Positions 48,827 to 62,859 of a stretch of 64,000 bases of DNA are shown here, one piece after another. Positions within the stretch are counted from its first letter, which is position 1. Each line of letters starts with the position of its first letter. The notes beneath the pieces are model-generated. The model was not told the DNA's origin. It ran no database searches and was given only the letters and a program-made list of their open reading frames with translations. Source of the stretch: Oopsacas minuta. Lineage: Eukaryota; Animalia; Porifera. Made by a program: the position numbers and the translations under genes. The DNA lies in NCBI GenBank assembly GCA_024704765.1, contig JAKMXF010000066.1, forward strand, positions 186,001 through 250,000, in the 5' to 3' direction.

Positions 48827-50889
48827 TTCTACAATTATTAACCACTACAATTACTATATATATATATGCTCCAGCAAGTGAGATAGTAATTTGGAATTTT
48901 GGCATCAGATTTCTACATATTTATCAGAGCAATTTATATACAATGTTAAGTAGCATAAAAATTACTTAATCACGTAAACATCACTATACAACTGTACCAC
49001 TTCCATATCACAAAGTATATGAGGAATTGCATTCATTAAAATGGTAATAACTAGGACATGCTTTCTCGAGTTTGAATATTAGCATAGCTATGGCACTAAG
49101 TATTAGAAATATTCTATAGAGATTAGAGAATACACACAATATTTCAAGAATTCTGGAACATACATTTCACCAACTGAAAACTTCACACTGCCTTCTTAGT
49201 AAAGCTTGCAGAGGTAAAACTATGAGACAGTAAAGAAGAGTCTGGAAATGAAGAGGTTCTGAGATATGAACATTTTCTCATGATCAAGTTCGCGCGTTCC
49301 AGAGTTATACTAGTGACCATGGATGGCATATTTTCGCCAACATGACAAAATTTTGATATTTTGTATAGTAACATCCTTAAATCCCATGGTATAAATCTGG
49401 AACCGTAATTGTATTAATTACTCTCTACAGAGTTTCAAAACTGGAACATTTTCTGACATATTTGCTAAGTATGTAATCAAATGAAGTACTTTTGGCTTGA
49501 AAATAGTCTATAACCCGACAGTGAAATAGCTTCCGACAATACAAATTCACCTGCATAATCCGGCAAAATTTTAATGATCCAACGAGTGCCGGTTTATGCA
49601 GGTTCCATTGTATGAGGATTTGGAAACAGTAAATGGTGAGATATTGACAAAATGTCATAGTGACAATATGCGTGTAGCAAAAAATTCAGATGCGGGAGGT
49701 GGAGCTGAAACAAGTTTACAACTAATAGTGGCATTATAGTAACAAAATTACATCATAGAGTTCTTGTTTGTAATATCATATGTTGTTACGAATAAAAACT
49801 ATAAATAAAAATGAGTGATATTCATGTTGTAAAGCACATACATTAAATCTTGTGGATTGGTAACTGTGTTGAAATATTTATGATGTTATCCAACAACTCA
49901 ACAATCCAGGAAATTCCTTTTGGAAATTAACAACCAACCAACAAGATCCTCAGCTAGTAAGGTGAATAAATACTGATTGAACGAAAATAATCAGCTTTAA
50001 TGCTTTAATGCTTTAATATGCATAAGGGAAGAGCCAAAAAATTAAGCATTTATAACAGAAATATCATGAATGTGGTCAAAACGAAATCTACAGGACTAGC
50101 GCAATCTTGCTACATTAAACGTATGTTCTTCTGAAGTTAAAATTATAAGTTTTAATAATAACTGCTTACATTACACAACTTTAAAATAGAAAAATAGACG
50201 AAAAGATAAACTGAAATTACTTTGACTTAGATTAAGCTATACGCTATACGTATTACACGTACATCAATCTACTTACTTGGCTAATCTGAACAAAATCGAC
50301 TACACAAGGCTCCCAAGGTATCCCGATAAATTTGTTTCGTTTTACCACACACATGAGCAGCACATAGTTAAATAGTGGTATAGTGGTTATCACTTACTAA
50401 AATACCCTTGTGAATAGCAAAATAGGTTCTTTTAACCGATATGAATTATACAAAAGTTATGTGAATCGTTTTCCGAAGGATGGTTCTTATATCTGGTATG
50501 TTGTTATAACGGGTGTTCTTATAACGATAACTATTGTATTTTAAGCCTAGCGGTAGAGCAGATTGTTCAGGTAAAGTGGTAGGAACCTGCTACCCCTAGT
50601 TAAATTTAAACTATTCAGGAAAGTTTTCCCAACCAGAACCTTTTGGGCCATATAAGGTATCTCTCTGGCCTCCCATAGATAGCAATACATTACACCCAAA
50701 TATGTTCAGTGGACCATAGGTTGGAAACACTGAATCAGAGTACCATAACAATACATTTAGGTTTTCAGGAATATTCAAATATTTGAGAGCATTTACAAGA
50801 ACACACTATAATACCTATAATTGTACAACATACAAGCTATAATTCTTCTAAAAATAGAATATAATACTGCATGCAGATAAATACACTTG

Positions 50890-52336
50890 TCACGTGTCTG
50901 TAATCTGTTCTGAAAATCTGAAGGCAACTAACAACTTATTACAGAGTGGGTATCCTAGTGCTAGTGCTAACTCTTCAAGAGTCTCATATATATAGTGTTT
51001 TGTTTCTGAATATATTTTATATTTATCAAGCAATTCCTCACATCTCATTATCTCTCCATTGAGAAATACACGTATGTTAGAACCCTTTATTATAATCTTA
51101 TGTACTTCACTCATGTATGCTCGGTCGATGTCAATTGATTTGTAGTTATTCTCACTATCAGGCAGAAGTTCGGGGCGAGATGAAGGCACGCTAGTTAATT
51201 CGGGAGGTATTCTACCCTCAGCTAACGGAGGTTGGAAACCAGTTTGGATGTATGGAATGTTGATATTTTCTGTCCAATAGGGACTGTGGCAAGGAGAACA
51301 GAATTCAATAGGTTTGTAATTCGCCTTATAAGCTAACTTATGATTTGGACCATTCCAGCCTTGTAAATAGTAATACTTACAAAAGGGATTAATCTTATTC
51401 AAACTTATTATATACTCAATCTCTTTAAGAGATGAATAAACTCCTAAAGACATCTTTGCAACTTCCTTAGACATGTCATAAAAGAAATATACACTAACTA
51501 CTCCTTCAAGAATGACGTCAATAACTCCTATTGCGATTAGTTTGCCATTTAGTCTGTATTCTTGATGGAAAGTACCGTAGTTAATGCCATTACGTGTTTC
51601 TGGTTTGAGAGGAGATAGTACTGCATGCTCTGCGTATGCATTAGCTGTTTTAGCTGATTTATCATGCTTATCGAGATGGTACCTATTGTAGAGATCTACT
51701 CCCTCCTGTGTTAATCTGAGGGATTCAAGAATAAATAAAAATTTTCTCAACATGATACGTAATCTATTGCTGGTACATATTTAGCGATCAGGTGGCTAAG
51801 TGTGGAAAATTGGCTATATAACACTCAATTTTTATTACCTTGCTGGTACAGTCTCAATGACAACATCATTAGGCACCTTCTTCAGTACTCTCTTAAATGT
51901 TTTAGAACTATTGATATCAAATTCCTTAACTCGTACTCTCGTCTCCCAATCACAGCAGACTTTTTTGTGTTGTGAATTGAACCGGAACATCTTACTGCCT
52001 CCCCTTCGGTACCAACCGTTGTTAACCAGCTGCTGATATTGCTCAAGTGTCACTGCGTCTGGTCGCATAACCACTTCAGATCTAGGAGCTTCTTGCTCAC
52101 AATTTGAACAGAAGTGACGAGTAACACCGAAATGTCTATGCACTATGAAATTATCGCTGTTGTTAGGAAGAATAGGATTTGTGACTGGTTGGGGTAATGG
52201 ACGGGGAATAACGTGACAAACAAACTTGTCTAAACAATCCAAGCACCATCTCTTCAAATCATCCATTTCATCTGCTAGTGAAGGTTTGTCCATAGCTTCA
52301 AATATAACTCCATCCAATCCAAAGTCTCCAGTGTAT
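50890..52336 (-). CDS. ATE1: ATE1-like arginyltransferase domain (last two exons)
   Basis: Exons 52336-51839 and 51715-50890 are joined by a 123-nt intron (an in-frame alternative acceptor at 51763 also exists). The N- and C-terminal ATE motifs are clear, but the protein is divergent, so orthology to canonical ATE1 is uncertain. Confidence 0.85.
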
Positions 52337-55300
52337 CTAAAGTAATATAAGCACTTTTATAATATGTCCACGTATATGAATATAATTGGGTTCTTCTACC
52401 CAATAACCTAGGTTGCTGTATACAAATTTTCCAGGAACCTATTAAGTAACGTAAAGGATGGGTTGCTGGGAGATTTGTATGTAGAATCTAGGTTGCCGGT
52501 TAGAAAATCCTTATAAACGAAAAACGGATTATGAAAGCAAATTTATTGTTTGACTGAAGAGTGGATGATTCTTTTGAAGTTATGTATAAACTATGTATGT
52601 TAAAGGGGTGTATAATACAACCGATATACTCTGCATTTGATTGTGAATTTGCAGAAATTGGTACCCAGAACGATTCTATATTTATAGGGGATCAATTTTT
52701 GCATCCAATGCAAGACACATTAAACTTATAATACATTCGGGTAGCACAAATTATCACACACGTATATATATGATGATGCATAATTATTGCAGGGTTCATT
52801 TTGGGGGCACCCTCAAATCAATTTTGGGAGGACCATAATGAACCGCTACAATTATCAAATGACATAATTAGGCAATGTTAGCAGCGTTTGCCCGCTGGCA
52901 GACATGATGATTATAACGTCAATTGGTTAGAGCAATTGTTGTATATTATTATTATTATAATGGAATATACATAAGAATGCTATGTATAAAGAACAACACA
53001 AAGAACATGTACCAGCCTCAAAAAGCGAATAATCTTAAACTTAAATATGGAGAAGAGTAAAGATATCGTAGACAGAGGAAAATGTATATGTATATTACGG
53101 AACTATTTAAAAAAGTATTTTGAGGTTACTAACAGTAGTTTGATCATTTGTCGTAGAAAGACAATAAACTAGATATGTTCACAAACAATGAATTAAACCT
53201 GCAAATTACACACATATAAATAATTGAATTTTAAAGCCAGGTCCAGCTGCATATACAGGTGGTAGATGGTTAGTAACAGTGAAATTTCCTTTGTTATGTT
53301 CTTTGGCCATTCAAAAAATAAACCCAGGAATATGATTAATTGACACCTACCTTACACCCAAATCATGCTCAGACATAGAGATAAAGAAGAAACAACCGTA
53401 ACCGAATATTTTTCCATGTTTCATCTTTCTCATTTGTGAAGAAATCAATTCAAACAATTGTTTTGTAAAGAATTGTTCTCTGTCAGGAACAGCCACGTAA
53501 CTCAGACCAGCCAAAAACGTGAAACTCCTCCAGATAACCTCAGTAACACTGGGATCTCTACGTAGAATACTCACTACATCTTTCTTTAGATCAGTTTTTA
53601 ACATAGCTTGTTTTGCATCATCTCCTGAAGCGAGTATTTGAATACCTCTAAGAGCTGTACAATATAACGACCAGTCGGGATCTGTATCTGTTGAAATTGT
53701 TTTAATCATGTCTAATAGCATTAAGTGCATCCCAGATTCTAAAAGGAAGAAACAAGGTTAGGATCTATCTAAATTTATACACCCTTATACTAATATGTGT
53801 AGATTAAATGTCTGAGAAACCCTCAGTGTAGATATGTTTTTGGAGTAAAAAAAATGCTTGATTTCCACACTTTAGTGTGATCAATGATATTTTCAATCTT
53901 TTCAATCTTTTCAATCAATTTATAACCAAGAATAAATATAATTTCTCACCAACAAACTTGTCTAAATATTAACTCTAGATATATTAAGGGTCTAGGCGAA
54001 CATTAATGTACAAAAATGGTAATATATTCCAATTATCATGTCAATAACTGCCAGTTTTGAAAGGATCGCATGGACGTAAATAGGGTCATACATCGTCCAT
54101 ACTCACAGCAAATTTCTTGCTCAAAAATAGATATATTATATAATACATGACACCGTTTAAAAAGTGTACCTTTAATATTCCTATTATCAACTGTACAATA
54201 TTTACATAGTAAAAGTGTATTTAAGAAAATTACAATACAAAATAGTAAAACTACACATTATCAATAATGAAGATGATTTTTCCATTGAAAAGATTCTCTA
54301 ACTCTGCAACAGATTTTCCTTTTGTCTCAGGAGTAAACACAAAAGTAATCACGCACACTATCATAAACAGTATACTCACTCCGAATAGGAAATAACATCT
54401 AGGGATACTGTTACTAACGATAGGGTATAACGTTACTAATACGAAAGATGTCATGAATAGCATGAATATTCCTATACCCGAAACTAAATGTTTAATATTT
54501 AGCGGTATGAGTTCTCCAAGCAGTATATAACATACACTATCGACTCCTAAACCAAAAACGAGGCTGAAAAACATAATGTAGACAATAGGCCATGCTATAA
54601 GATATGAACTCAAACATACGCCAGTAATAGTATATTGCAAAAGTATGTTCTCTAGGGCAACAGGACAAATCATGTCGATAATATGCAAGTATATTGACAA
54701 AACTACAAGTGATATCGTTATACCTAAGCATGATATTAACAACAGCATCTTCCTACCTATTTTGTCTATTAAGAATGTGTTCAAAACGCTGCCGAAAATC
54801 ATAGTCAGTGGATAAACTATTCCTATTAGATTAGCGTCTATATGATCGTTAGTGAGAAGTTCCGAGGCATAACTAGAGAGGAGATTAATACCAGACATTG
54901 GACAAGCAATGGCTATGAACATTATTATTATAAGTGCTTCGATGTTATTCAGCTTAAATAAAGTAAATCAATTGCTTATGTTTATAGACTGGCATTTTTG
55001 TATACATGCTACCTTTGCTTGTATAATAATTGTCTCTACTATGTACTCACCAAACATGGCCTCCTTAGCCTTAGTGCTATGTATTCCAATATTAGCCAGA
55101 GAGTTAATCGCTGCCCGGACACTGGTCTTTGTATAATGCTCTGGTGTGGAAATGAATTCCAGCATTTTAGGGATTACTCCATGTTCATACATTGAAATAG
55201 AAGATAACTTATCACATGATAAATTCATGAAACAGAATGATAGAACTTCATGAAGAGAGTCCTTTGTTTCGTCAGTTGTCTATGGTAATAATACACACAT

Positions 55301-58300
55301 ACATAATGACATAACATGCAAGCTGCATTACAAATCTAGTATAAGCTTACAGGTCTAAAGAAGAGAGTTATAAATGTATTGTGGAAGGTTGGATCATTTA
55401 ATTGTTTAATATCCTTGAATTGTTGTTGATAGCAGATCATGATTCCGTTAATAATCGTTAAAAACATCATTACTGTCTGGAGGTCTGCTTCTTGGGAAAG
55501 GCACTACAAGATTTTAATAAATCTTAATAGAATCAAAGAGAGAATTAAGAAAAGAATGGATAATTATGGATAATTAATTATGGATAATTTTTGACATCCG
55601 AGCTCAAACGCTGTGAATAATGGTTAAAATTCTCACATTATACGCATATCGATATAAATAGATATAATAACTCCGATACAAATACAGAATCGGAGAACCA
55701 GAAGAGACAAATATTCAAGATACTGAATATGTACATGAGTTAGTATATTCATTAATTATCAAACGGGTAGATATCACAATATACAAATATAAATATCTCA
55801 ATAGGGAATATAGCCAAAAGTACAGAAACTATGTAGGGGAAATTAATGCCATATTTGTAGTTGATTACTATCACATTGATTCACGACTATTATAGTGATA
55901 TTACTATCTTTTTGCACGAGAGTAATCCCAGTGAGTCTACCGAGTGTTTGTCTATTTCCAATTGTATGCAGACAACAGCCTTCGTAATTAAATATAAATA
56001 TCCTGTTAGCATCTGTTAATAGAATAAAATTATTACGATTATCAATGTCGAAATATCCTGGAAAACGAATATTTAGAATTGAGTCTCCAGACCATTTCCT
56101 CAATAAATGCCCATATATGGTAAAAAATAGGAACGTTGATTCTCCCCAGTCTAATACAATTAATTCCTCATTGTCAGTCACTTTAACATCTCTAGGGCTT
56201 GTAAGCTCTCCTTCGCATAGAATGCTATTGTTTGATGCAGGATTCAAATCATAGTCCAGGACAATAATATTTTTGTATCCATATGAGCATACATACAATT
56301 TCTCAGCATGAATACATATTCCAGTTGGATGATCTATATGACTGTAGTGTTTGGTGTAGCTACCTGTTACAGAGAATTTAATTACTCTATCAGGCTGACA
56401 TTGAGTTAAAAATATGTTATTAGCGTCTACACAGATAGAAATAGGATGAGAGAGTTTAGGATGTTGAATTTTGTATATGAAAGAGGCTGTGTAGTCGAAT
56501 ATTTGAATTCTATCATTATTTGTATCACAAATGTATAGAAATGAAGAGTTTGTTGCTATTCCTGAAGGAGAGTTTAACATACCATTACCAGATCCGTGAT
56601 TACAAGATGAAACCTCTGATCTAGTTAGTCGCTTATAAATGGATACTCTTGGTTTAGGAATTGGAGAAGAAATTGATATTTGCTTCTTTATGAAAATAGG
56701 TTTATCAATTGTACAGATACAATCCAATTGATCCATCATTCGCTGATCCCATTTTAATATTATATCACAATTCACTTCATGATCTAATTCCCTTCCAATC
56801 TCTTCCATTTGGATATTTACTCTATCAAACTTTTCCTTAACTAATCCGCTAAAACCGTTTTCTTTAAATATTTCCTCAAAAGTATCTTTCTCCTTCTGAA
56901 GGTTAGCATAATTTTCTTTAAGATTAATAAAATTTTTGGATATTTTGTTTAAGTCATTTGTTAATTTTTCTCCTATTTTATTGGCCTTTTTATGTAAATC
57001 TTCAACATATGTTTCTATTAAGAATTTCTTGTCATTAATTCTGCGAAAAAAGTTTAATTCTCTGTCTTTTTCTGGGAATTTTTCAGCCATTATTACAAAC
57101 AAAATGTTTATTAAATGAAAAGATGAATTTGATATGTTCACAATACTAGACCATAGAGAATAGAGAGATCCAGTAGAGCCATGCTCAGAATTGCAAAATT
57201 ATGTTCTTTGATAGAACCTTTACTTGTGTGCATAATAAGTAACAAGAGAAGTTATCCTTACTGTTGTAATTACCACTCAAATGAGCTCTTAGTTTTCTCA
57301 AACAATTCGACAGATTGAAAATAGCATATATGTATGTATTGGCACAACACATACAATTATTCTATAAAATCTGAAGTAAAATCGCTTTTACTCAGTACAA
57401 AAATAAACGAGAAATAGCATTCTTCCATCATGAAAATGCGGAATTAAATTTTCCACAAACGCCACTTTAGACTATTATCGAAAATAAGAGATTTTCAAAA
57501 ACAAAGATAATATAGAACTCAAGAAAAAGTGATATATTCCTACTAACTATCCATTATCCATTGATATCTCAATATATACTAGCTAATTTATCCTCATCTC
57601 ATGTTAAAGTATATCTATGTATATTCTAAATTATCCTCTGAAAACTTAACCTCATCATATCATATACTACATAGTAATTAATATACAAGTCATTTTTAGC
57701 ACAAGTGAATGGACAGGACAGTGGACTGGTTGTTCATAATAAAAAACCCTGACTGTACATAAAAGGATAATTGCTTTTGTACGTACACAAATAAGGTGTA
57801 AGTCTTTTGCGATTAAATACAGCCAACTTCCGTTATATCAAAGTCAAGGGACTGTGATAATTAATTCCATATAAATGGATGCAATACAACCACGACCAAT
57901 GAAATTAATGCTATTTTGACGATACAGAACTATACTTGTACAATTCAAGACTTCTACATAAGGGTGTATTAGATATGTCAGTGTTCGATATAACGGGAAT
58001 TGACCGTAATTCTATTTCCATAATCCCATCACATGGGTACATTTAAATGTGCCAAAAATACTTTGGATTAGAAGAATTATTTTAAGTTCTATGCGGGTTC
58101 TATTCGATCAATAAATAAGCATCCCTATAGTAAATTCTTACCTCAGTAATCCCACTAGCTATCTCAGAATCAACCATAGCTTCTGCTTGACTTCTATCAG
58201 ATTTATCTATACCGTATATTAGCCTCAGGATAAACTGAACAGTGTCTTTATCCCCGGTTCTATGGAAAACAATAAATGCATTTCTCAATCCTTTCAATAG

Positions 58301-61300
58301 CTCAGTAGAGAAACGCATGCTACGATTACGTTGTGCTAGGTTACTTAACATCCCTATTGACTGCAGTAGCACTACTTGTCCATCAGTGCTTGCCAGTGTT
58401 ATACCCAGGAGGTCTTGGAATTCTGAGTATGTTAGGGAAGAGGGAGGGGAGGCTAGATCATCTTTAGGGTCTTTTGATAATTTATCAACTGAATAACTGA
58501 ATGTTACTCCTGCAGTAGCCGCGAATACATTGTCAGGTAATTCGATCTTCTCTTTCCTTGCACGAATCAGATTTTTCAATAGTAACCGTGCTATTAAGGT
58601 TTTGTCCTCTATTTTCAATGAAAATACGATCAAACCCAATATAGGACAAACACTAAAATGCATGTCTATAGAACAGGTATCATCCTGTAGTGTAGTTATG
58701 CAGAAGGATAGTATAGGATGATTTGTATCAGCTAATTGCGGAATAAGCCCCCTCTGCTCTGTTATGAAATTAGTTAATAATACAAACACTTCTTTCATCA
58801 GTTCTACGTCACGCGGGTAAAGTTGTAGTAGTGTAGAAATGTGGTTTGGTAGAGAAGTAAAGTTTGTGTCCTGCTTTATATTTGGGTTAAATATGAATGC
58901 ATTCTTAAGCAGCGTCATGGTTGCTAAGCAAACAGACTTATGATTGGGATTGTCTTCAAGAATTGGTAGTAGTAACGGTAAATAATCAAATCCTCCGTGA
59001 TTAGTGAATAGAGTAGGTAGATGTATAACAAACTCACTGAGAACCGAGAGAATTAGAGATAGGTTGTGTGTAGTATGTTCTGAGTATGAGAAGTATAGTT
59101 CTGTACAGGTTGTGAGTGTTGTAGCAGCTACATCTTCTTGTGATTGTGATTTTGTGTTAGGCTCCCTTATGAAGTATACACAGCTCTAAAGTGGAGAAAT
59201 GTATTGAAAGTTTACTGATAGGTTGCATGTTCGTATGTTGCTGTTTGTTCACACTTGTATCACACGAGTATTAACCCCTTCCTGCAGGCAAATTTATGGA
59301 TATTTGAAGATACACAAAAGTGGAAAAAATGTCGGAATTTTTGTAGGAATGGGTAAATTAAGTGTACCAATTCACTATGACTGTAGTACTTACCAGTAAG
59401 TATAGAGTAATTGTGGCCTCATCCTTGGTGTTATCAGCATACAAACTGTTAGCAAGTTGAACTAGTTTATCAGTAAGAGACGGAGCTAAAATAAATTCAG
59501 AATCCTTTATGTAGATTGATAATACATTATTGAGGAAGCGTAAGAATGCAGTAAATTCCTTCCCATCTCTTCTGTACGTATCTATTGTATTTATAATAGA
59601 GAGTATAGGGAAATCTTTAAAGTCAGGACTAGCGGAGAGTTCTTCTAAGCGGGCGGAGTCTAGACAAGATTGAGCGAATTTTTCAGCTCTGACAAGAGAT
59701 TCTGAAGTGGGAGATGGGTTGTTTAAGAGTGACTTTAGTTCTATCAGCTGACTAGATAAATAAATTGTATTCATATCAGGTAAAGGTTCTTACAGTCAAC
59801 TCCCGTTATATCGACACAGATATAGCGAAATAATTGATTATACGAAGTATGAAATTGTATAAATATTGTCATAAACCGTCAAAGTAACATAAATATAATA
59901 AGTTATATAGAACTCCGTTATGTTGAAGTAATTATCACTTGAGCTTTGATATAATGCTAGTTGACTGTACACTATGTTTCTCGACCGATATTAGATCATA
60001 AACAAGATTATACAATCGAGAATATGTAATCCCTCATAATGTATTTTAAATTTATATTACTAAGAAATATAACATACTTCAAGAGTAGTTGGGAAGTAGA
60101 TACATCCTTTATCTGACTATCATCTAACTTTAATTCTAGAACCTTTGCGCCTTCAGCCATTTCTGCTAAATACCAAGTACGTATAGACAAGATGGTGAGA
60201 GCTACAATATTGTATCACTCAATCAATTGGAAACACCGATAGCTTGTGCCTGTCTTAAAGAAGTAACAAGCATATGCAAAAAATGGTGTGGGTTTCGCTA
60301 ACACGGAGACGATTGGTTCTGGTTAAGATGTACTAAATTTGCGTCTTTGCTCGAAAGAAAAATACAAAAAGAGCAGGGCCTTATTCAGTTTCATATTGAT
60401 AGTATTATGTGTATGTCGTAATGTGAAATGTAGTTAACATTGCGCAATAACACACAACTAACAATATTAGTATTGTAGAAGAGCTAAAAGAATCAATGAG
60501 GCTATTACAATATTAAGATATCAACAGCTGATTTAGATGACATGAACTGAGATAAATTTATGAATTAATAATTATCATAATTTACATTACCAAAGTATTA
60601 GAGAGAGATTGCATAGTAGATTGCCTATGAAAGTGAAGCTCTGCTGCAACTAGCTTATGAATATGGTAGCGTTATTTATTAGTATATTGAATAACGTAGT
60701 TATATATTGTACAAATGATATTTGACCTTTGATATATTAAAGAGAACACAGAAAATATCAAATCATTAGAATGCAGACAAGACTGATTGCATTCTAAGAT
60801 TATGATGTATAATATAAAAAGTGATAGAATTTACAAACGAAATAGCAGTCATATCAAAGTTCAATTCTCTGATTCTCAAATGCCTGTAGCTTTGAGTTAT
60901 ACAACTGGACGAGAGGATCGACAGTACCTTTATTCTTTTCCAAATTCTTGTACCAGCTAGTGAGACAGCGTGTAATGTCCCTGTCTTGTGGGCTCTTTAT
61001 CTGGAGAGCATCTAGTAGGGCATCAGCACAAGAGTATTGAACAGGCGGGGGTACTATATACAGTCAAGGGACAAAAGTATTCGACCACACAAATATATTG
61101 TCATAAATTGTATACTCTTTCCCGCTCCTATATATTGTGTAGTCTATATTCGTAGCTGCAATCTAGTAATTTCCATAGAATAACATATGTTTTTCAAGAA
61201 TTTCAAAAAAATATTTTCGATTTACACTTTCTGAAGGTGTTAATTATGAATAATTATTAGATAATTATTGATAATCAAATATGTGGTAATTCAAAGCCTA

Positions 61301-62859
61301 TTAAGAATCTATAATTTCTGACTTGATACTTGAATTCTACTTAGGCGAGTTACCCCAGATTGAAATTTCCAATCGAATTGAACAACTTTTACTAAAGTTA
61401 TAGAAGAATTTCAATTTGTCCCACTTGTGCCACTTTTGGAAAAAGTGGCACAAGTGGCAGGAAAAAGCGCCACTACAAGGAAATCAACTAGGGTTAGGAG
61501 GAATAAGTCAAAGTACTATTTTCGAATGATATGACTATGCTAACCCTTGAATTACAAAATAACTTCTTGGTAGCGGCCACTTGTGCCACCTTGGGCAAAA
61601 GGTGGCACAAATTGGAATTCTTCTATAACTTTAGTAAAAGTTGTTCAATTCGATTGGAAATTTCAATCTGGGGTAACTCGCCTAAGTAGAATTCAAGTAT
61701 CAAGTCAGAAATTATAGATTCTTAATAGGCTTTGAATTACCACATATTTGATTATCAATAATTATCTAATAATTATTCATAATTAACACCTTCAGAAAGT
61801 GTAAATCGAAAATATTTTTTTGAAATTCTTGAAAAACATATGTTATTCTATGGAAATTACTAGATTGCAGCTACGAATATAGACTACACAATATATAGGA
61901 GCGGGAAAGAGTATACAATTTATGACAATATATTTGTGTGGTCGAATACTTTTGTCCCTTGACTGTATACATATACATAAAAGGATTACAGAAGTGTGCA
62001 TTTTTAAGTCAGGGGGCGGACGAAATTGAAATGGTTAACTGGTGAGTAGTATGCTCATCGGAAATCTCCATATTAACCACATTTTGGTGAACATTTTCCT
62101 GTAATATTTGGATTTCGTACTCGGTTATAACGAAATTCAAGTACTGTTCTTGAGAGCTCTTATATTGTAAACTGAGTTAAATTGCTAATCAAATGATAAT
62201 TCAATTAATAAAGACTTAATACCTTTTGATGATTTAATACTCGTATAGAGGATGTTAATCAATAAGCTCTGCTGTTTGACAGGCTGTCTTTCGTCTCGAA
62301 TAAAGCGCAGTTTCTTCAAATAACCTAAATTCATATAGAAGAAATTTAGAGATTATCCACACATAAAGCTATGTCATTAATTCGGCAAAGTATAATCTAC
62401 GTAGAATATTAATAGATAAGTAAAAAGTGATATTATTAGATACAGAAATTAAAGTAAAATAAATATCATAAGTTATCAATCATATGATCTAGCATCATAT
62501 GATTGATAATACTGAAATTATGACGTATGCTCCTATCAGCATTCTAATTATAGATTTATAGTAAATTAATATTATATGTAACAGGAAATAATATTAATAA
62601 TTATAATCACCACTAGAGCATTTCAAGAAATGAATTAACTGTATTGGGGTTGTTTCCATATGATATATACTTAATAAAGGAAAAAATTTCCTAGAAGTAT
62701 TCATAAACAGTCTTTAGAACAGCGGGTCAACTTTTTTAACCCGTGGACGCCGTATAGGCCTATACCATTTTAGTACATTCTGTGGACCCCAGGTTGGCAA
62801 CCACAACACAAAAACTAACTTTCCAATTTCTGGAGTCAAATACCTTTCAACAACCCCAT
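50890..62859 (-). CDS. Predicted ARM/HEAT-repeat + ATE1-type arginyl-tRNA-protein transferase fusion (~1,174 aa)
   Basis: Phase-consistent GT-AG exons: 62859-62844, 62324-62223, 61053-60928, 60165-60078, 59751-59394, 58936-58142, 55279-55013, [54952-54892], 53738-53351, 52336-51839 and 51715-50890 (3525 nt). The first three exons and the bracketed exon are least certain. The C-terminal part has ATE1 motifs CSNC, GWYRRGG, CC, GTFHQEY, IAIGVID, SVYFFYD, SLGVYSSLKEI and YKANYKP. Confidence 0.6.
54251..54952 (-). CDS. C-terminal half (about 6 TM) of a GLUT8-like sugar transporter, paralog of 47398-48826, inside the ARM-ATE1 locus
   Basis: FKLNNIEAL...SGINLLSSYASELL...LIDKIGRK...LLGELIP...TPETKGKSVAELE aligns with the second half of the upstream transporter; no N-terminal half is visible. 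Confidence 0.75.
   Translation of the reverse strand: MNNIEALIIIMFIAIACPMSGINLLSSYASELLTNDHIDANLIGIVYPLTMIFGSVLNTFLIDKIGRKMLLLISCLGITISLVVLSIYLHIIDMICPVALENILLQYTITGVCLSSYLIAWPIVYIMFFSLVFGLGVDSVCYILLGELIPLNIKHLVSGIGIFMLFMTSFVLVTLYPIVSNSIPRCYFLFGVSILFMIVCVITFVFTPETKGKSVAELENLFNGKIIFIIDNV
55843..57090 (-). CDS. Coiled-coil + NHL beta-propeller protein (TRIM2/3/71-like, no RING or B-box), nested in an intron
   Basis: ATG at 57090. The N-terminus is heptad-rich. NHL repeats include GSGNGMLNSPSGIA..LYICDTNNDRIQIF, LSHPISICVD and LTSPRDVKV. It lies wholly within intron 55280-58141. Confidence 0.85.
   Translation of the reverse strand: MAEKFPEKDRELNFFRRINDKKFLIETYVEDLHKKANKIGEKLTNDLNKISKNFINLKENYANLQKEKDTFEEIFKENGFSGLVKEKFDRVNIQMEEIGRELDHEVNCDIILKWDQRMMDQLDCICTIDKPIFIKKQISISSPIPKPRVSIYKRLTRSEVSSCNHGSGNGMLNSPSGIATNSSFLYICDTNNDRIQIFDYTASFIYKIQHPKLSHPISICVDANNIFLTQCQPDRVIKFSVTGSYTKHYSHIDHPTGICIHAEKLYVCSYGYKNIIVLDYDLNPASNNSILCEGELTSPRDVKVTDNEELIVLDWGESTFLFFTIYGHLLRKWSGDSILNIRFPGYFDIDNRNNFILLTDANRIFIFNYEGCCLHTIGNRQTLGRLTGITLVQKDSNITIIVVNQCDSNQLQIWH
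59793..59967. mobile_element. CAGT-family MITE
   Basis: TA|cagtcaactcccgttatatc ... gatataatgctagttgactg|TA; a similar end is at 45698. Confidence 0.65.
61061..61965. mobile_element. 905-bp Tc1/mariner-type foldback MITE with 350-bp perfect TIRs and TA TSD
   Basis: 61061-61410 is the reverse complement of 61616-61965; TA on both sides; the central spacer carries two further hairpins. Confidence 0.92.

What the first reader, a model, noticed from the sequence alone, without database searches (positions are those of the whole stretch)
50890..62859. ARM/HEAT-repeat scaffold fused to an arginyl-tRNA-protein transferase
Seen: the ATE1-like exon begins at a good acceptor (ttatattactttag|a, 52336) with no convincing start upstream. 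The preceding helical-repeat exon ends at a strong donor of matching phase (gta ag|gtaggt, 53351). The junction reads as a continuous ARM-like repeat: KIFGYGCFFFISMSEHDLGVR-YTGDFGLDGVIFEAMDKPSL. Tracing phases upstream links up to 11 exons into ~1,174 aa. Established: known ATE1/Bpt enzymes are stand-alone, tRNA-dependent N-degron writers of roughly 230-520 aa; I know of none with an ARM array. Inference: this could be a dedicated arginylation system with a built-in substrate or partner recognition scaffold, distinct from housekeeping ATE1.
Basis: partly seen in the sequence, partly recalled or inferred. Interest (0 to 1): 0.9.

Follow-up and report, generated by a model that had tools for sequence, protein, structure and literature searches.

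The report
Sponge arginyltransferase with built-in armadillo arm
This is one gene for a 1,192-residue protein that joins a long armadillo-repeat arm to an ATE1-type arginine-adding enzyme; the same design is found in three classes of sponges, sits in databases only as "uncharacterized protein", and no paper I could find describes it.

Summary
The fusion is real. The helical-repeat exon ending at 53351 and the ATE1-like exon starting at 52336 belong to one minus-strand gene.

- **Gene model:** eight coding exons (60160..50890), all GT-AG, 1,192 aa.
- **Ortholog test:** a related sponge genome has the same eight exons with identical lengths and no gaps. There the window's candidate start Met (52293) is Ile, and no stop follows the donor.
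- **Family profile:** all five exon junctions from exon 3 to exon 8 are gap-free against a profile of the family.
- **Family size and range:** at least 148 ARM+ATE proteins, median 1,270 aa. Five loci I checked encode the whole protein as one uninterrupted ORF. Named members are Amphimedon and Sycon "uncharacterized proteins".
- **Distinct clade:** one branch separates the family from canonical ATE1 (SH-aLRT 98).
- **Active site:** the catalytic Lys and the Arg-binding Glu are kept. So are the pocket Arg and, in the window's protein, the zinc cysteines. A functionally important Tyr of CGYC is Asn (CxNC) throughout the family.

The NHL gene and the half sugar-transporter ORF lie inside introns.

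No RNA data could be obtained, and the function is inferred. The scan also flagged two more such loci in this genome; I did not check them.

The parts
60078..60160 (-). Coding exon 1 (83 nt). It starts at ATG 60160 (MAEGAKVLELKLD...) and ends at the donor AA|gtatgt.
   Evidence: The Met and the donor phase are conserved in the relative (MADTPKVLALKLD), while the sequence upstream of the ATG is not conserved as protein. The start codon is inferred, not shown.
59394..59751 (-). Coding exon 2 (358 nt), N-terminal helical region.
   Evidence: The exon has the same length and the same GT-AG sites in the relative, with 50% aa identity. It has no significant match to the wider family profile.
58142..59185 (-). 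Coding exon 3 (1,044 nt, 348 aa), armadillo-type alpha-solenoid.
   Evidence: It aligns to family HMM positions 140-402. The AF2 model has pLDDT 86.7 and pTM 0.80 and is all helical. The best PDB matches are armadillo proteins. Identity to the relative is 58%.
55351..55503 (-). Coding exon 4 (153 nt), ARM region.
   Evidence: It covers HMM positions 403-453, contiguous with exons 3 and 5. The length and splice sites are the same in the relative.
55051..55279 (-). Coding exon 5 (229 nt), ARM region.
   Evidence: It covers HMM positions 454-526 (E 3e-8 as a lone ORF segment). Identity to the relative is 76%.
53351..53738 (-). Coding exon 6 (388 nt), the last ARM exon, ending at the donor AG|gtaggt after 53351.
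   Evidence: It covers HMM positions 527-654 (1.3e-16). In the relative the donor is conserved at the same phase, and there no stop follows at once.
51839..52336 (-). Coding exon 7 (498 nt): linker plus the ATE_N domain. It carries CSNC (52110-52099), the pocket Arg in WYRRGG (52014-51997), CC (within 51960-51946) and the basic helix SKTFKRVLKK (51906-51877).
   Evidence: Pfam ATE_N scores 29.7 bits. It matches human ATE1 8TZV and K. lactis Ate1 7WFX. The HMM continues at position 655 with no gap. The codons before ATG 52293 show pS 0.75 against pN 0.18.
50890..51715 (-). Coding exon 8 (823 nt plus the TGA stop): ATE_C (GNAT) domain and C-terminal tail. It carries FHQ (within 51576-51556), the Glu of SLKEIE (51432-51415) and the Tyr-Lys of LAYKANY (51336-51316).
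   Evidence: Pfam ATE_C gives 4e-25. Human ATE1 gives 1e-19 and yeast ATE1 1.7e-10. Identity to the relative is 79%.
55843..57090 (-). Intronless coiled-coil + NHL-repeat ORF nested on the same strand in intron 3. It is not part of the protein.
   Evidence: Pfam finds NHL. The exon 3/4 junction is gap-free in the family profile. No such ORF was called in the relative's intron.
54251..54967 (-). C-terminal half of a sugar-transporter (MFS) ORF inside intron 5. It is not part of the protein.
   Evidence: Pfam Sugar_tr positions 262-452. The relative has a complete 472-aa Sugar_tr gene in the same intron. The exon 5/6 junction is gap-free.
60857..62859 (-). Separate upstream gene of about 105 aa: 62859-62844, 62324-62223 and 61053-60857 including the stop.
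Evidence: Conservation runs past the assumed splice sites to a stop.

Best explanation
The locus is a single minus-strand gene of eight coding exons (60160-50890). It encodes a 1,192-aa long-form arginyl-tRNA-protein transferase. About 750 residues of armadillo-type alpha-solenoid are joined through a conserved linker to a complete ATE1 module (ATE_N zinc/Fe-S domain, ATE_C GNAT domain and a C-terminal tail).

It belongs to a large family of ARM-ATE proteins. The family is a separate clade from canonical ATE1, and every member I could name comes from a sponge.

Inferred mechanism, not shown:
- The enzyme still takes Arg from Arg-tRNA(Arg). The catalytic Lys, the Glu that holds the Arg side chain, the basic tRNA helix and, in the window's protein, the CX2C...CC metal site are kept.
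- It still needs a negatively charged acceptor, because the pocket Arg is invariant.
- The acceptor/tRNA-end pocket is remodelled: the Tyr of CGYC is Asn, and a second Tyr is Phe.
- The rigidly attached ARM solenoid selects or positions particular protein substrates or partners.
For: **One gene in this genome**
- All junctions are GT-AG with matching phases, and the 1,192-aa frame is open.
- The orthologous locus in a related sponge genome (ENA ERZ25072740, loci L004-L006) has eight exons of identical lengths: 83, 358, 1044, 153, 229, 388, 498 and 823 nt. All are GT-AG, giving 1,192 aa with zero alignment gaps.
- In the relative the window's Met at 52293 is Ile, and no stop follows the exon-6 donor at once.
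- Synonymous sites are saturated while pN is 0.10-0.24 in every part. This includes the 14 codons between the acceptor and the ATG.
- The junctions of exons 3/4, 4/5, 5/6, 6/7 and 7/8 fall on consecutive positions of a profile built from 26 family members.
- Overlapping contigs from independent DNA runs tile the intron between 53351 and 52336, with flat depth.

**The family**
- An exhaustive phmmer search with the last exon gives, as best hits, proteins of 900-1,330 aa with the ATE domain at the C-terminal end.
- 148 proteins in hand match both the ARM and the ATE parts.
- In five loci the whole protein is one uninterrupted ORF.
- Named members are Amphimedon and Sycon.

**Structure and phylogeny**
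- The AF2 model of the homolog P0002 has pLDDT 92.4 and pTM 0.85. Its C-terminal module matches human ATE1 (8TZV, TM 0.76 by target). Its N-terminal part matches armadillo proteins.
- One branch separates 40 ARM-ATE rows from 48 canonical rows, with SH-aLRT 98.3.

**Residues**
- K304, Y303, E277 and R80 equivalents (K. lactis numbering) are conserved in 128-132 of 132 family members.
- The CxxC third residue is Asn in 121 of 132 family members, against Tyr in 48 of 48 canonical ATE1.
Against: - No transcript evidence could be obtained. The runs offered were genomic DNA, and none with an RNA library word was listed.
- An in-frame TAG sits directly after the exon-6 donor and an ATG lies 43 nt into exon 7. 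A separately translated ATE product, or an ARM-only isoform, therefore cannot be excluded in this species.
- The start codon at 60160 is inferred only from conservation in one relative.
- In K. lactis Ate1 the Y25F change nearly abolishes activity on Nt-Glu substrates (PMC9351520). The Asn here could therefore mean different chemistry, or loss of classical activity.
- The fourth metal-site Cys is less well kept in the family (Cys in 82 of 132; Ser, Ala or Asn in others), though the window has it.
- The ARM part has no Pfam hit above threshold.
Confidence: 0.85

Rival explanations
1. There are two adjacent genes. An ARM-only gene ends at the TAG at 53349-53347. An independent ATE1-like gene starts at ATG 52293. 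The phase match of donor and acceptor would be a coincidence, or a relic of an ancestral fusion.
For: The TAG directly follows the last ARM codon if the donor is not used, and an in-frame ATG exists at 52293. No RNA data were available to exclude this.
Against: - In the relative the ATG is ATT (Ile), and read-through gives no immediate stop.
- Protein conservation starts exactly at the acceptor, not at the ATG. The 14 pre-ATG codons show 7 synonymous against 6 non-synonymous differences, with pS 0.75 and pN 0.18.
- The family profile runs across the junction without a gap.
- Relatives encode both parts in one ORF.
Confidence: 0.05
2. It is a single fused gene, but the ATE module is no longer a classical N-terminal Asp/Glu arginyltransferase. 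It would be either a pseudo-enzyme used as a binding module, or an enzyme with a different acceptor, such as another N-terminal residue or a side chain.
For: - The Tyr of CGYC is Asn in the window and in 121 of 132 family members, and the Y87 equivalent is Phe in 117 of 132. In yeast ATE1 this Tyr contacts the tRNA 3' end (PMC10115844).
- In K. lactis Ate1, losing only its hydroxyl (Y25F) nearly abolishes activity on Nt-Glu and strongly lowers it on Nt-Asp (PMC9351520).
Against: - The catalytic Lys (132 of 132), the Arg-binding Glu (128 of 132), the pocket Arg (132 of 132), FHQ and the basic tRNA helix are retained under strong purifying selection. The four metal-site cysteines are all present in the window and mostly kept in the family; the fourth is Cys in only 82 of 132.
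- The Asn itself is conserved. That points to a working but altered site rather than decay.
Confidence: 0.25
3. It is an assembly artefact: the ARM exons and the ATE exons were joined by a mis-assembly.
For: Contigs of three runs break at 54964, and depth is raised over 54200-54800. The assembly around the sugar-transporter fragment is therefore not beyond doubt.
Against: - That break lies in intron 5, not between the ARM and ATE parts.
- Overlapping contigs from the DNA runs tile 52251-54875.
- Two haplotype contigs of another species show the same order and the same exons.
Confidence: 0.01

Closest known systems
Canonical ATE1 arginyl-tRNA-protein transferase (human ATE1, PDB 8TZV; S. cerevisiae, 7TIF/8E3S; K. 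lactis, 7WFX)
   Same: - The ATE_N and ATE_C domains are present and the fold matches (TM 0.76 against 8TZV for the homolog model).
- The window has the CX2C...CC metal motif, and it is mostly kept across the family.
- The equivalents of K. lactis R80, E277, Y303 and K304 are kept, as are the basic tRNA-binding helix and FHQ.
   Different: - About 750 extra N-terminal residues form an armadillo solenoid.
- The Tyr of CGYC is Asn, and the Y87 equivalent is Phe.
- The family forms a separate clade (SH-aLRT 98.3).
- Several copies per genome have been flagged in this sponge, whereas yeast and mammals have one gene (PMC9351520).
Amphimedon queenslandica LOC109580598 (XP_019849508.1, UniProt A0A1X7VEI5, 1,274 aa) and Sycon ciliatum LOC135804982 (XP_065175038.1, 1,310 aa)
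   Same: The ARM + ATE_N + ATE_C architecture, the length class and the clade are the same. The Amphimedon protein shares a 90%-identity cluster with a hit that is 62% identical to the homolog P0002 over the ATE region.
   Different: They come from other sponge classes, and the sequences are far diverged. The best full-length relatives are about 36-59% identical to the window's last exon. They are annotated only as uncharacterized or by the domain name. I found no paper on them.
Bacterial Bpt (Asp/Glu leucyltransferase)
   Same: It shares the GNAT aminoacyl-tRNA transferase core. The AFDB fold search also returns Bpt-like entries for the C-terminal module.
   Different: Bpt proteins are small stand-alone enzymes of about 240-380 aa that transfer Leu. 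The window's protein is far closer to eukaryotic ATE1 in sequence, and it keeps the Glu tied to Arg binding.
Armadillo-repeat peptide readers (beta-catenin, p120, importin-alpha, ARMC5/ARMC8, ZYG11B/ZER1)
   Same: The N-terminal part has the same fold class. ZYG11B/ZER1 show that such repeats can read protein N-termini.
   Different: Similarity is at fold level only (TM 0.4-0.6, E about 1e-2 for the window's exon 3). The Pfam ARM_ARMC5 matches in homologs lie far below the cut-off (20-32 bits against 79.9). No BTB or other partner domain is present.

Membership tests
ATE1 / arginyl-tRNA-protein transferase | ATE_N domain (Pfam PF04376) above the curated cut-off | tested here: met
   29.7 bits against a cut-off of 27, E 7.9e-7, in exon 7.
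ATE1 / arginyl-tRNA-protein transferase | ATE_C GNAT domain (Pfam PF04377) above the curated cut-off | tested here: met
   89.2 bits against a cut-off of 25, E 4.1e-25, in exon 8. Human ATE1 8TZV gives 1e-19.
ATE1 / arginyl-tRNA-protein transferase | Strictly conserved CX2CXnCC metal-binding motif (PMC10115844) | tested here: met
   CSNC at 52110-52099 and CC within 51960-51946.
ATE1 / arginyl-tRNA-protein transferase | Catalytic Lys (K. lactis K304) with the preceding Tyr303, the acidic residue binding the Arg moiety (E277), and the pocket Arg80 (PMC9351520) | tested here: met
   The window has Y-K in LAYKANY, E in SLKEIE and R in WYRRGG. In the family they are conserved in 132, 132, 128 and 132 of 132.
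ATE1 / arginyl-tRNA-protein transferase | Highly conserved Tyr inside the CxYC loop (K. lactis Y25, S. cerevisiae Y22), needed for full activity | tested here: not met
   The window has Asn (CSNC). Asn is found in 121 of 132 family members, and Tyr in 48 of 48 canonical ATE1.
ATE1 / arginyl-tRNA-protein transferase | Arg transfer from Arg-tRNA to N-terminal Asp, Glu or oxidised Cys | not testable with these tools
   This needs an enzyme assay.
Long-form ARM-ATE family (sponges) | Colinear full-length match: ARM solenoid, conserved linker, ATE_N, ATE_C, tail | tested here: met
   Residues 202-1189 of the 1,192-aa protein (271-1258 of the first 11-exon model) align to profile positions 140-1158, total E 4e-192, with gap-free exon junctions.
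Long-form ARM-ATE family (sponges) | Placement inside the ARM-ATE clade, separate from canonical ATE1 | tested here: met
   One branch with SH-aLRT 98.3 separates 40 ARM-ATE rows (window included) from 48 canonical rows. It was a quick tree on 137 columns.
Long-form ARM-ATE family (sponges) | CxNC signature and length of 1,100-1,350 aa | tested here: met
   CSNC and 1,192 aa.
ARMC5-like armadillo proteins | ARM_ARMC5 (PF24768) above the cut-off, plus a C-terminal BTB domain | tested here: not met
   The window's exons give no hit. Homologs score 16-32 bits against a cut-off of 79.9. No BTB domain was found.

The most novel reading that the evidence does not exclude
Sponges carry a second arginylation system of their own, which may be restricted to the phylum. 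It would be a multi-copy family of armadillo-guided arginyltransferases whose remodelled pocket (Tyr to Asn) gives them an acceptor specificity different from the Asp/Glu N-degron rule. The ARM arm would choose the targets. In Oopsacas, whose genome is reported to lack several core animal genes, these might even be the only ATE-type enzymes: no stand-alone ATE1 has been noted in this scan so far, but that is not evidence of absence.
Probability: 0.3. Interest if true: 0.8.

Novelty: new variant of a known kind. Interest (0 to 1): 0.62.

Why it matters
ATE1 is treated as a single, stand-alone enzyme, and how it chooses substrates is an open problem. The solved structures could not detect tight substrate binding (PMC9351520).

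Here is a natural, strongly conserved version that is hard-wired to a peptide-binding type of scaffold, with a family-wide change at a residue known to control activity. That gives a ready-made system to ask three things:
- how targeting of arginylation can be achieved;
- what the CGYC tyrosine does;
- why one early-branching animal phylum kept and multiplied such enzymes.

It also corrects the annotation of this locus. There is one 8-exon gene with two unrelated ORFs inside its introns, and a separate small gene upstream.

Tried and rejected
- **RNA evidence.** The five runs offered were laid or inspected. X1-X3 have flat depth and Nextera adaptors, so they are genomic DNA. X5, a close relative, runs unspliced through the 123-nt intron, so it is also DNA. 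A second search restricted to RNA libraries listed none. The X2 'joint' 52022>52327 has a 29-nt side in one contig and was ignored.\n- **The 11-exon model.** Rejected at its 5' end once the relative showed conservation running through the assumed splice sites of 'exon 3' to a stop.\n- **N-terminal 270 residues.** They gave no significant match to any family member.\n- **Protein Atlas look-ups.** Those for the homolog P0002 and for the small upstream gene gave only generic ARM clusters or unrelated clusters, with scores of 0.82 or less.\n- **AFDB cluster search.** It returned only canonical ATE1 entries covering the C-terminal third. No organism names were given, so it could not define the family's range.\n- **Clade test with rows labelled by length alone.** It was rejected (p-AU 2e-8). 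The labels were wrong: they mixed in truncated fragments and one long unrelated-architecture protein. It was redone with architecture-based labels.\n- **WGS-prefix literature search.** An attempt to name three NCBI assemblies found nothing relevant.\n- **Search from the Sycon protein.** It found only six relatives, because of the word filter.\n- **The half sugar-transporter as an exon or alternative end.** I considered and rejected this. The exon 5/6 junction is gap-free in the family profile, and the relative has a complete independent transporter gene in that intron.
Full report
**What is in the sequence**

All features lie on the minus strand. Pfam finds ATE_C (E 4e-25, 89.2 bits) in ORF 51753-50890 and ATE_N (29.7 bits, cut-off 27) in ORF 52317-51835.

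Two facts left room for a two-gene reading. If the donor is not used, the ARM exon ends in TAG at once. An in-frame ATG also lies at 52293. In addition, two unrelated ORFs sit between the helical-repeat exons on the same strand:
- an intronless coiled-coil + NHL ORF at 57090-55843;
- the C-terminal half of a sugar transporter at 54967-54251.

**RNA evidence: none available**

The runs offered for this stretch are genomic. X1-X3 show flat depth of about 100-120 over exons and introns and carry Nextera adaptors. X5 is a close relative at 95-99% identity. It crosses the 123-nt intron unspliced, and it lies mainly on the exons, with only thin coverage in one intron. A search restricted to RNA libraries listed no run. 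The case below is therefore comparative, not transcript-based.

**The fused architecture is widespread**

I ran an exhaustive phmmer search of 1.84 billion representative proteins with the last exon. The best hits, after a 78%-identical fragment, are mostly proteins of 900-1,330 aa with the ATE domain at the C-terminal end. Pfam on eight of them gives weak ARM matches (ARM_ARMC5 in six), sub-threshold ATE_N matches in seven, and ATE_C in all. A word-indexed search found 158 long-form clusters at 90% identity. Of the proteins in hand, 148 match both the ARM and the ATE parts of the family profile, with a median length of 1,270 aa.

In five fetched loci the whole protein is one uninterrupted ORF on eukaryotic contigs of up to 1.3 Mb, so the fusion there does not depend on any splicing model.

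The members that carry names are all sponges:
- Amphimedon queenslandica XP_019849508.1 / A0A1X7VEI5 (1,274 aa, 'uncharacterized protein LOC109580598');
- Sycon ciliatum XP_065175038.1 (1,310 aa).

With that, three sponge classes are covered. The species name is not verified here. The Nextera mate-pair adaptors fit the published sequencing of that species (PMC10280926), and the nearest named relatives are sponges.

**The gene model**

A first 11-exon chain with matching phases gave 1,261 aa. A profile of 26 family members aligns residues 271-1258 of that model to profile positions 140-1158 (total E 4e-192). Five exon junctions fall on consecutive profile positions: 402|403, 453|454, 526|527, 654|655 and 875|876. 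Nothing is therefore missing or extra where the NHL gene, the transporter fragment and the 1-kb intron lie.

I then fetched the orthologous locus of a related sponge genome: ENA ERZ25072740, two haplotype contigs at about 320x depth, loci L004-L006. It shows:
- eight exons with exactly the same lengths as in the window (83, 358, 1044, 153, 229, 388, 498, 823 nt);
- GT-AG at every junction, and an open 1,192-aa frame;
- an alignment to the window's protein without a single gap;
- per-exon identity of 48, 50, 58, 59, 76, 74, 80 and 79%.

At the critical junction the relative keeps the donor (GTTAG|gtatgt) and the acceptor (tttag|ATATACG) in the same phase. It has no immediate stop after the donor, and it reads ...FEAINKPSL where the window reads ...FEAMDKPSL. 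The candidate independent start codon is therefore not conserved. Protein conservation begins exactly at the acceptor. The 14 codons before the ATG differ at 7 synonymous and 6 non-synonymous positions (pS 0.75, pN 0.18). That pattern matches the rest of the gene, where synonymous sites are saturated and pN is 0.10-0.24.

The revised model is:
- exon 1: ATG 60160 to 60078
- exon 2: 59751-59394
- exon 3: 59185-58142
- exon 4: 55503-55351
- exon 5: 55279-55051
- exon 6: 53738-53351
- exon 7: 52336-51839
- exon 8: 51715-50893, followed by the TGA stop.

**Correction at the 5' end**

In the relative, conservation runs through the assumed acceptor and donor of 'exon 3' to a stop. They form a separate gene of about 105 aa (62859-62844, 62324-62223, 61053-60857). 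Its family is unknown. The Met at 60160 is conserved in the relative while the sequence before it is not, so I take it as the start. This step is inferred.

**Fold**

AlphaFold2 on the 1,091-aa homolog P0002, with 60 family sequences, gives pLDDT 92.4 and pTM 0.85. The model is helical to about residue 635 and then a mixed alpha/beta module. Foldseek against the PDB matches the C-terminal module to human ATE1 8TZV (TM 0.76 by target) and to yeast ATE1 structures. The N-terminal part matches designed armadillo proteins and beta-catenin.

The window's own exon 3 (348 aa) folds as an all-helical solenoid with pLDDT 86.7 and pTM 0.80. Its best matches are armadillo proteins: 4RV1, p120 catenin, Armc8, Ric-8A, importin-alpha and ZYG11B/ZER1. 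The scores are weak (E from 3e-3, TM 0.4-0.59), as is usual for solenoids.

The AlphaFold DB cluster library holds no full-length look-alike. Only canonical arginyltransferases match, over the last third of the protein.

**Is the enzyme part intact?**

Alignments to K. lactis Ate1, yeast ATE1 and human ATE1 let the mutational data of PMC9351520 and PMC10115844 be mapped onto the window.

Retained in the window and nearly invariant in 132 family members:
- the catalytic Lys304 and Tyr303;
- Glu277, which binds the Arg moiety;
- Arg80, the acidic-substrate pocket;
- the FHQ motif and the basic tRNA-binding helix.

The CX2C...CC metal site is complete in the window. In the family its first three cysteines are well kept (116-130 of 132), but the fourth is Cys in only 82 of 132.

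Changed:
- The Tyr in the CxYC loop is Asn in the window and in 121 of 132 family members. It is Tyr in 48 of 48 canonical ATE1. This Tyr (sc Y22) contacts the tRNA 3' end. Its K. lactis equivalent, Y25, gives a Y25F mutant that is nearly dead on Nt-Glu.
- The Tyr87 equivalent is Phe in 117 of 132.

A change that is itself conserved, in a protein under strong purifying selection, points to a working but altered site rather than decay. That is an inference.

**Phylogeny**

I built a tree on the 137 best-aligned ATE_C columns with rows labelled by architecture. One branch (SH-aLRT 98.3) separates 40 ARM-ATE proteins from 48 canonical ATE1. The ARM-ATE side includes the window, its relative, Amphimedon and the Sycon group. 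The tree is a quick search on few columns. Relationships inside the clade are not resolved.

**Literature**

Full-text searches found no description of such a protein. The terms were arginyltransferase with armadillo, ATE1 with ARM repeat and fusion, and the Amphimedon locus name. The Oopsacas genome paper does not mention ATE1. The library is incomplete, so this is not proof of absence.

**Other copies**

The scan's index lists two other loci in this genome where first readers saw an ARM + ATE1 fusion (a third note, seen, concerns one of them). I did not check them. No note of a stand-alone ATE1 exists so far, which proves nothing.

**Verdict**

- The fusion is real and conserved.
- The gene is an 8-exon, 1,192-aa member of an undescribed family of long-form arginyltransferases that may be restricted to sponges.
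- Its mechanism is inferred from anatomy and awaits transcripts and biochemistry: ARM-guided arginylation through a remodelled acceptor pocket.

Noticed in passing
window 62859-60857 (-): A separate small gene of about 105 aa in three exons (MGLLKGYLKK...AFENQRIEL). The two upstream exons that align are 94-97% identical to the related sponge. It has no Pfam family and no convincing Atlas match. The N-terminal MG could be a myristoylation site.
   Followed up: partly
window 61057-61424 and 61602-61969: A 368-nt inverted repeat, 99% complementary, with a 177-nt spacer. It looks like a foldback or MITE-like insert in the last intron of the small upstream gene. Its end lies 4 nt from that gene's last acceptor (61053).
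   Followed up: partly
window 57090-55843 (-): An intronless coiled-coil + NHL-repeat ORF of about 415 aa, nested on the same strand in intron 3 of the ARM-ATE gene. No such ORF was called in the corresponding intron of the related sponge, so it may be a lineage-specific insertion.
   Followed up: partly
window 54967-54251 (-), break at 54964: Only the C-terminal half of a sugar transporter lies in intron 5, whereas the related sponge has a complete 472-aa transporter gene in the same intron. Contigs of three DNA runs diverge from the assembly at 54964 in both directions, and depth is raised over 54200-54800. A second haplotype, or another copy with more of the gene, probably exists. The diverging letters are not found anywhere in the window.
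   Followed up: partly
window 48826-47422 (-): A complete sugar-transporter gene lies downstream of the ARM-ATE gene. It is 49-68% identical, in two tBLASTn pieces, to the relative's intronic transporter. In the relative, a second transporter gene lies downstream on the opposite strand.
   Followed up: no
window 63938-63396 (-); L006 1040-1693: A PH-domain ORF lies upstream of the small gene in both the window and the related sponge. The gene order PH, small gene, ARM-ATE is therefore conserved. The relative then has an LRR gene after ARM-ATE.
   Followed up: no
window 50800-56800, run X5: Contigs of a closely related organism (95-99% identical) lie mainly on the exons of the ARM-ATE gene and on the NHL ORF, with only thin coverage in one intron and none on the transporter fragment. 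This acts as a rough conservation footprint that matches the exon map, although coverage is only about 5x.
   Followed up: partly
loci L001-L003, L008, L010: In the other genomes the ARM-ATE gene is a single intron-free ORF of 1,091-1,353 aa. The two glass-sponge-like genomes have seven introns at identical positions, so introns were either gained in that lineage or lost elsewhere.
   Followed up: no
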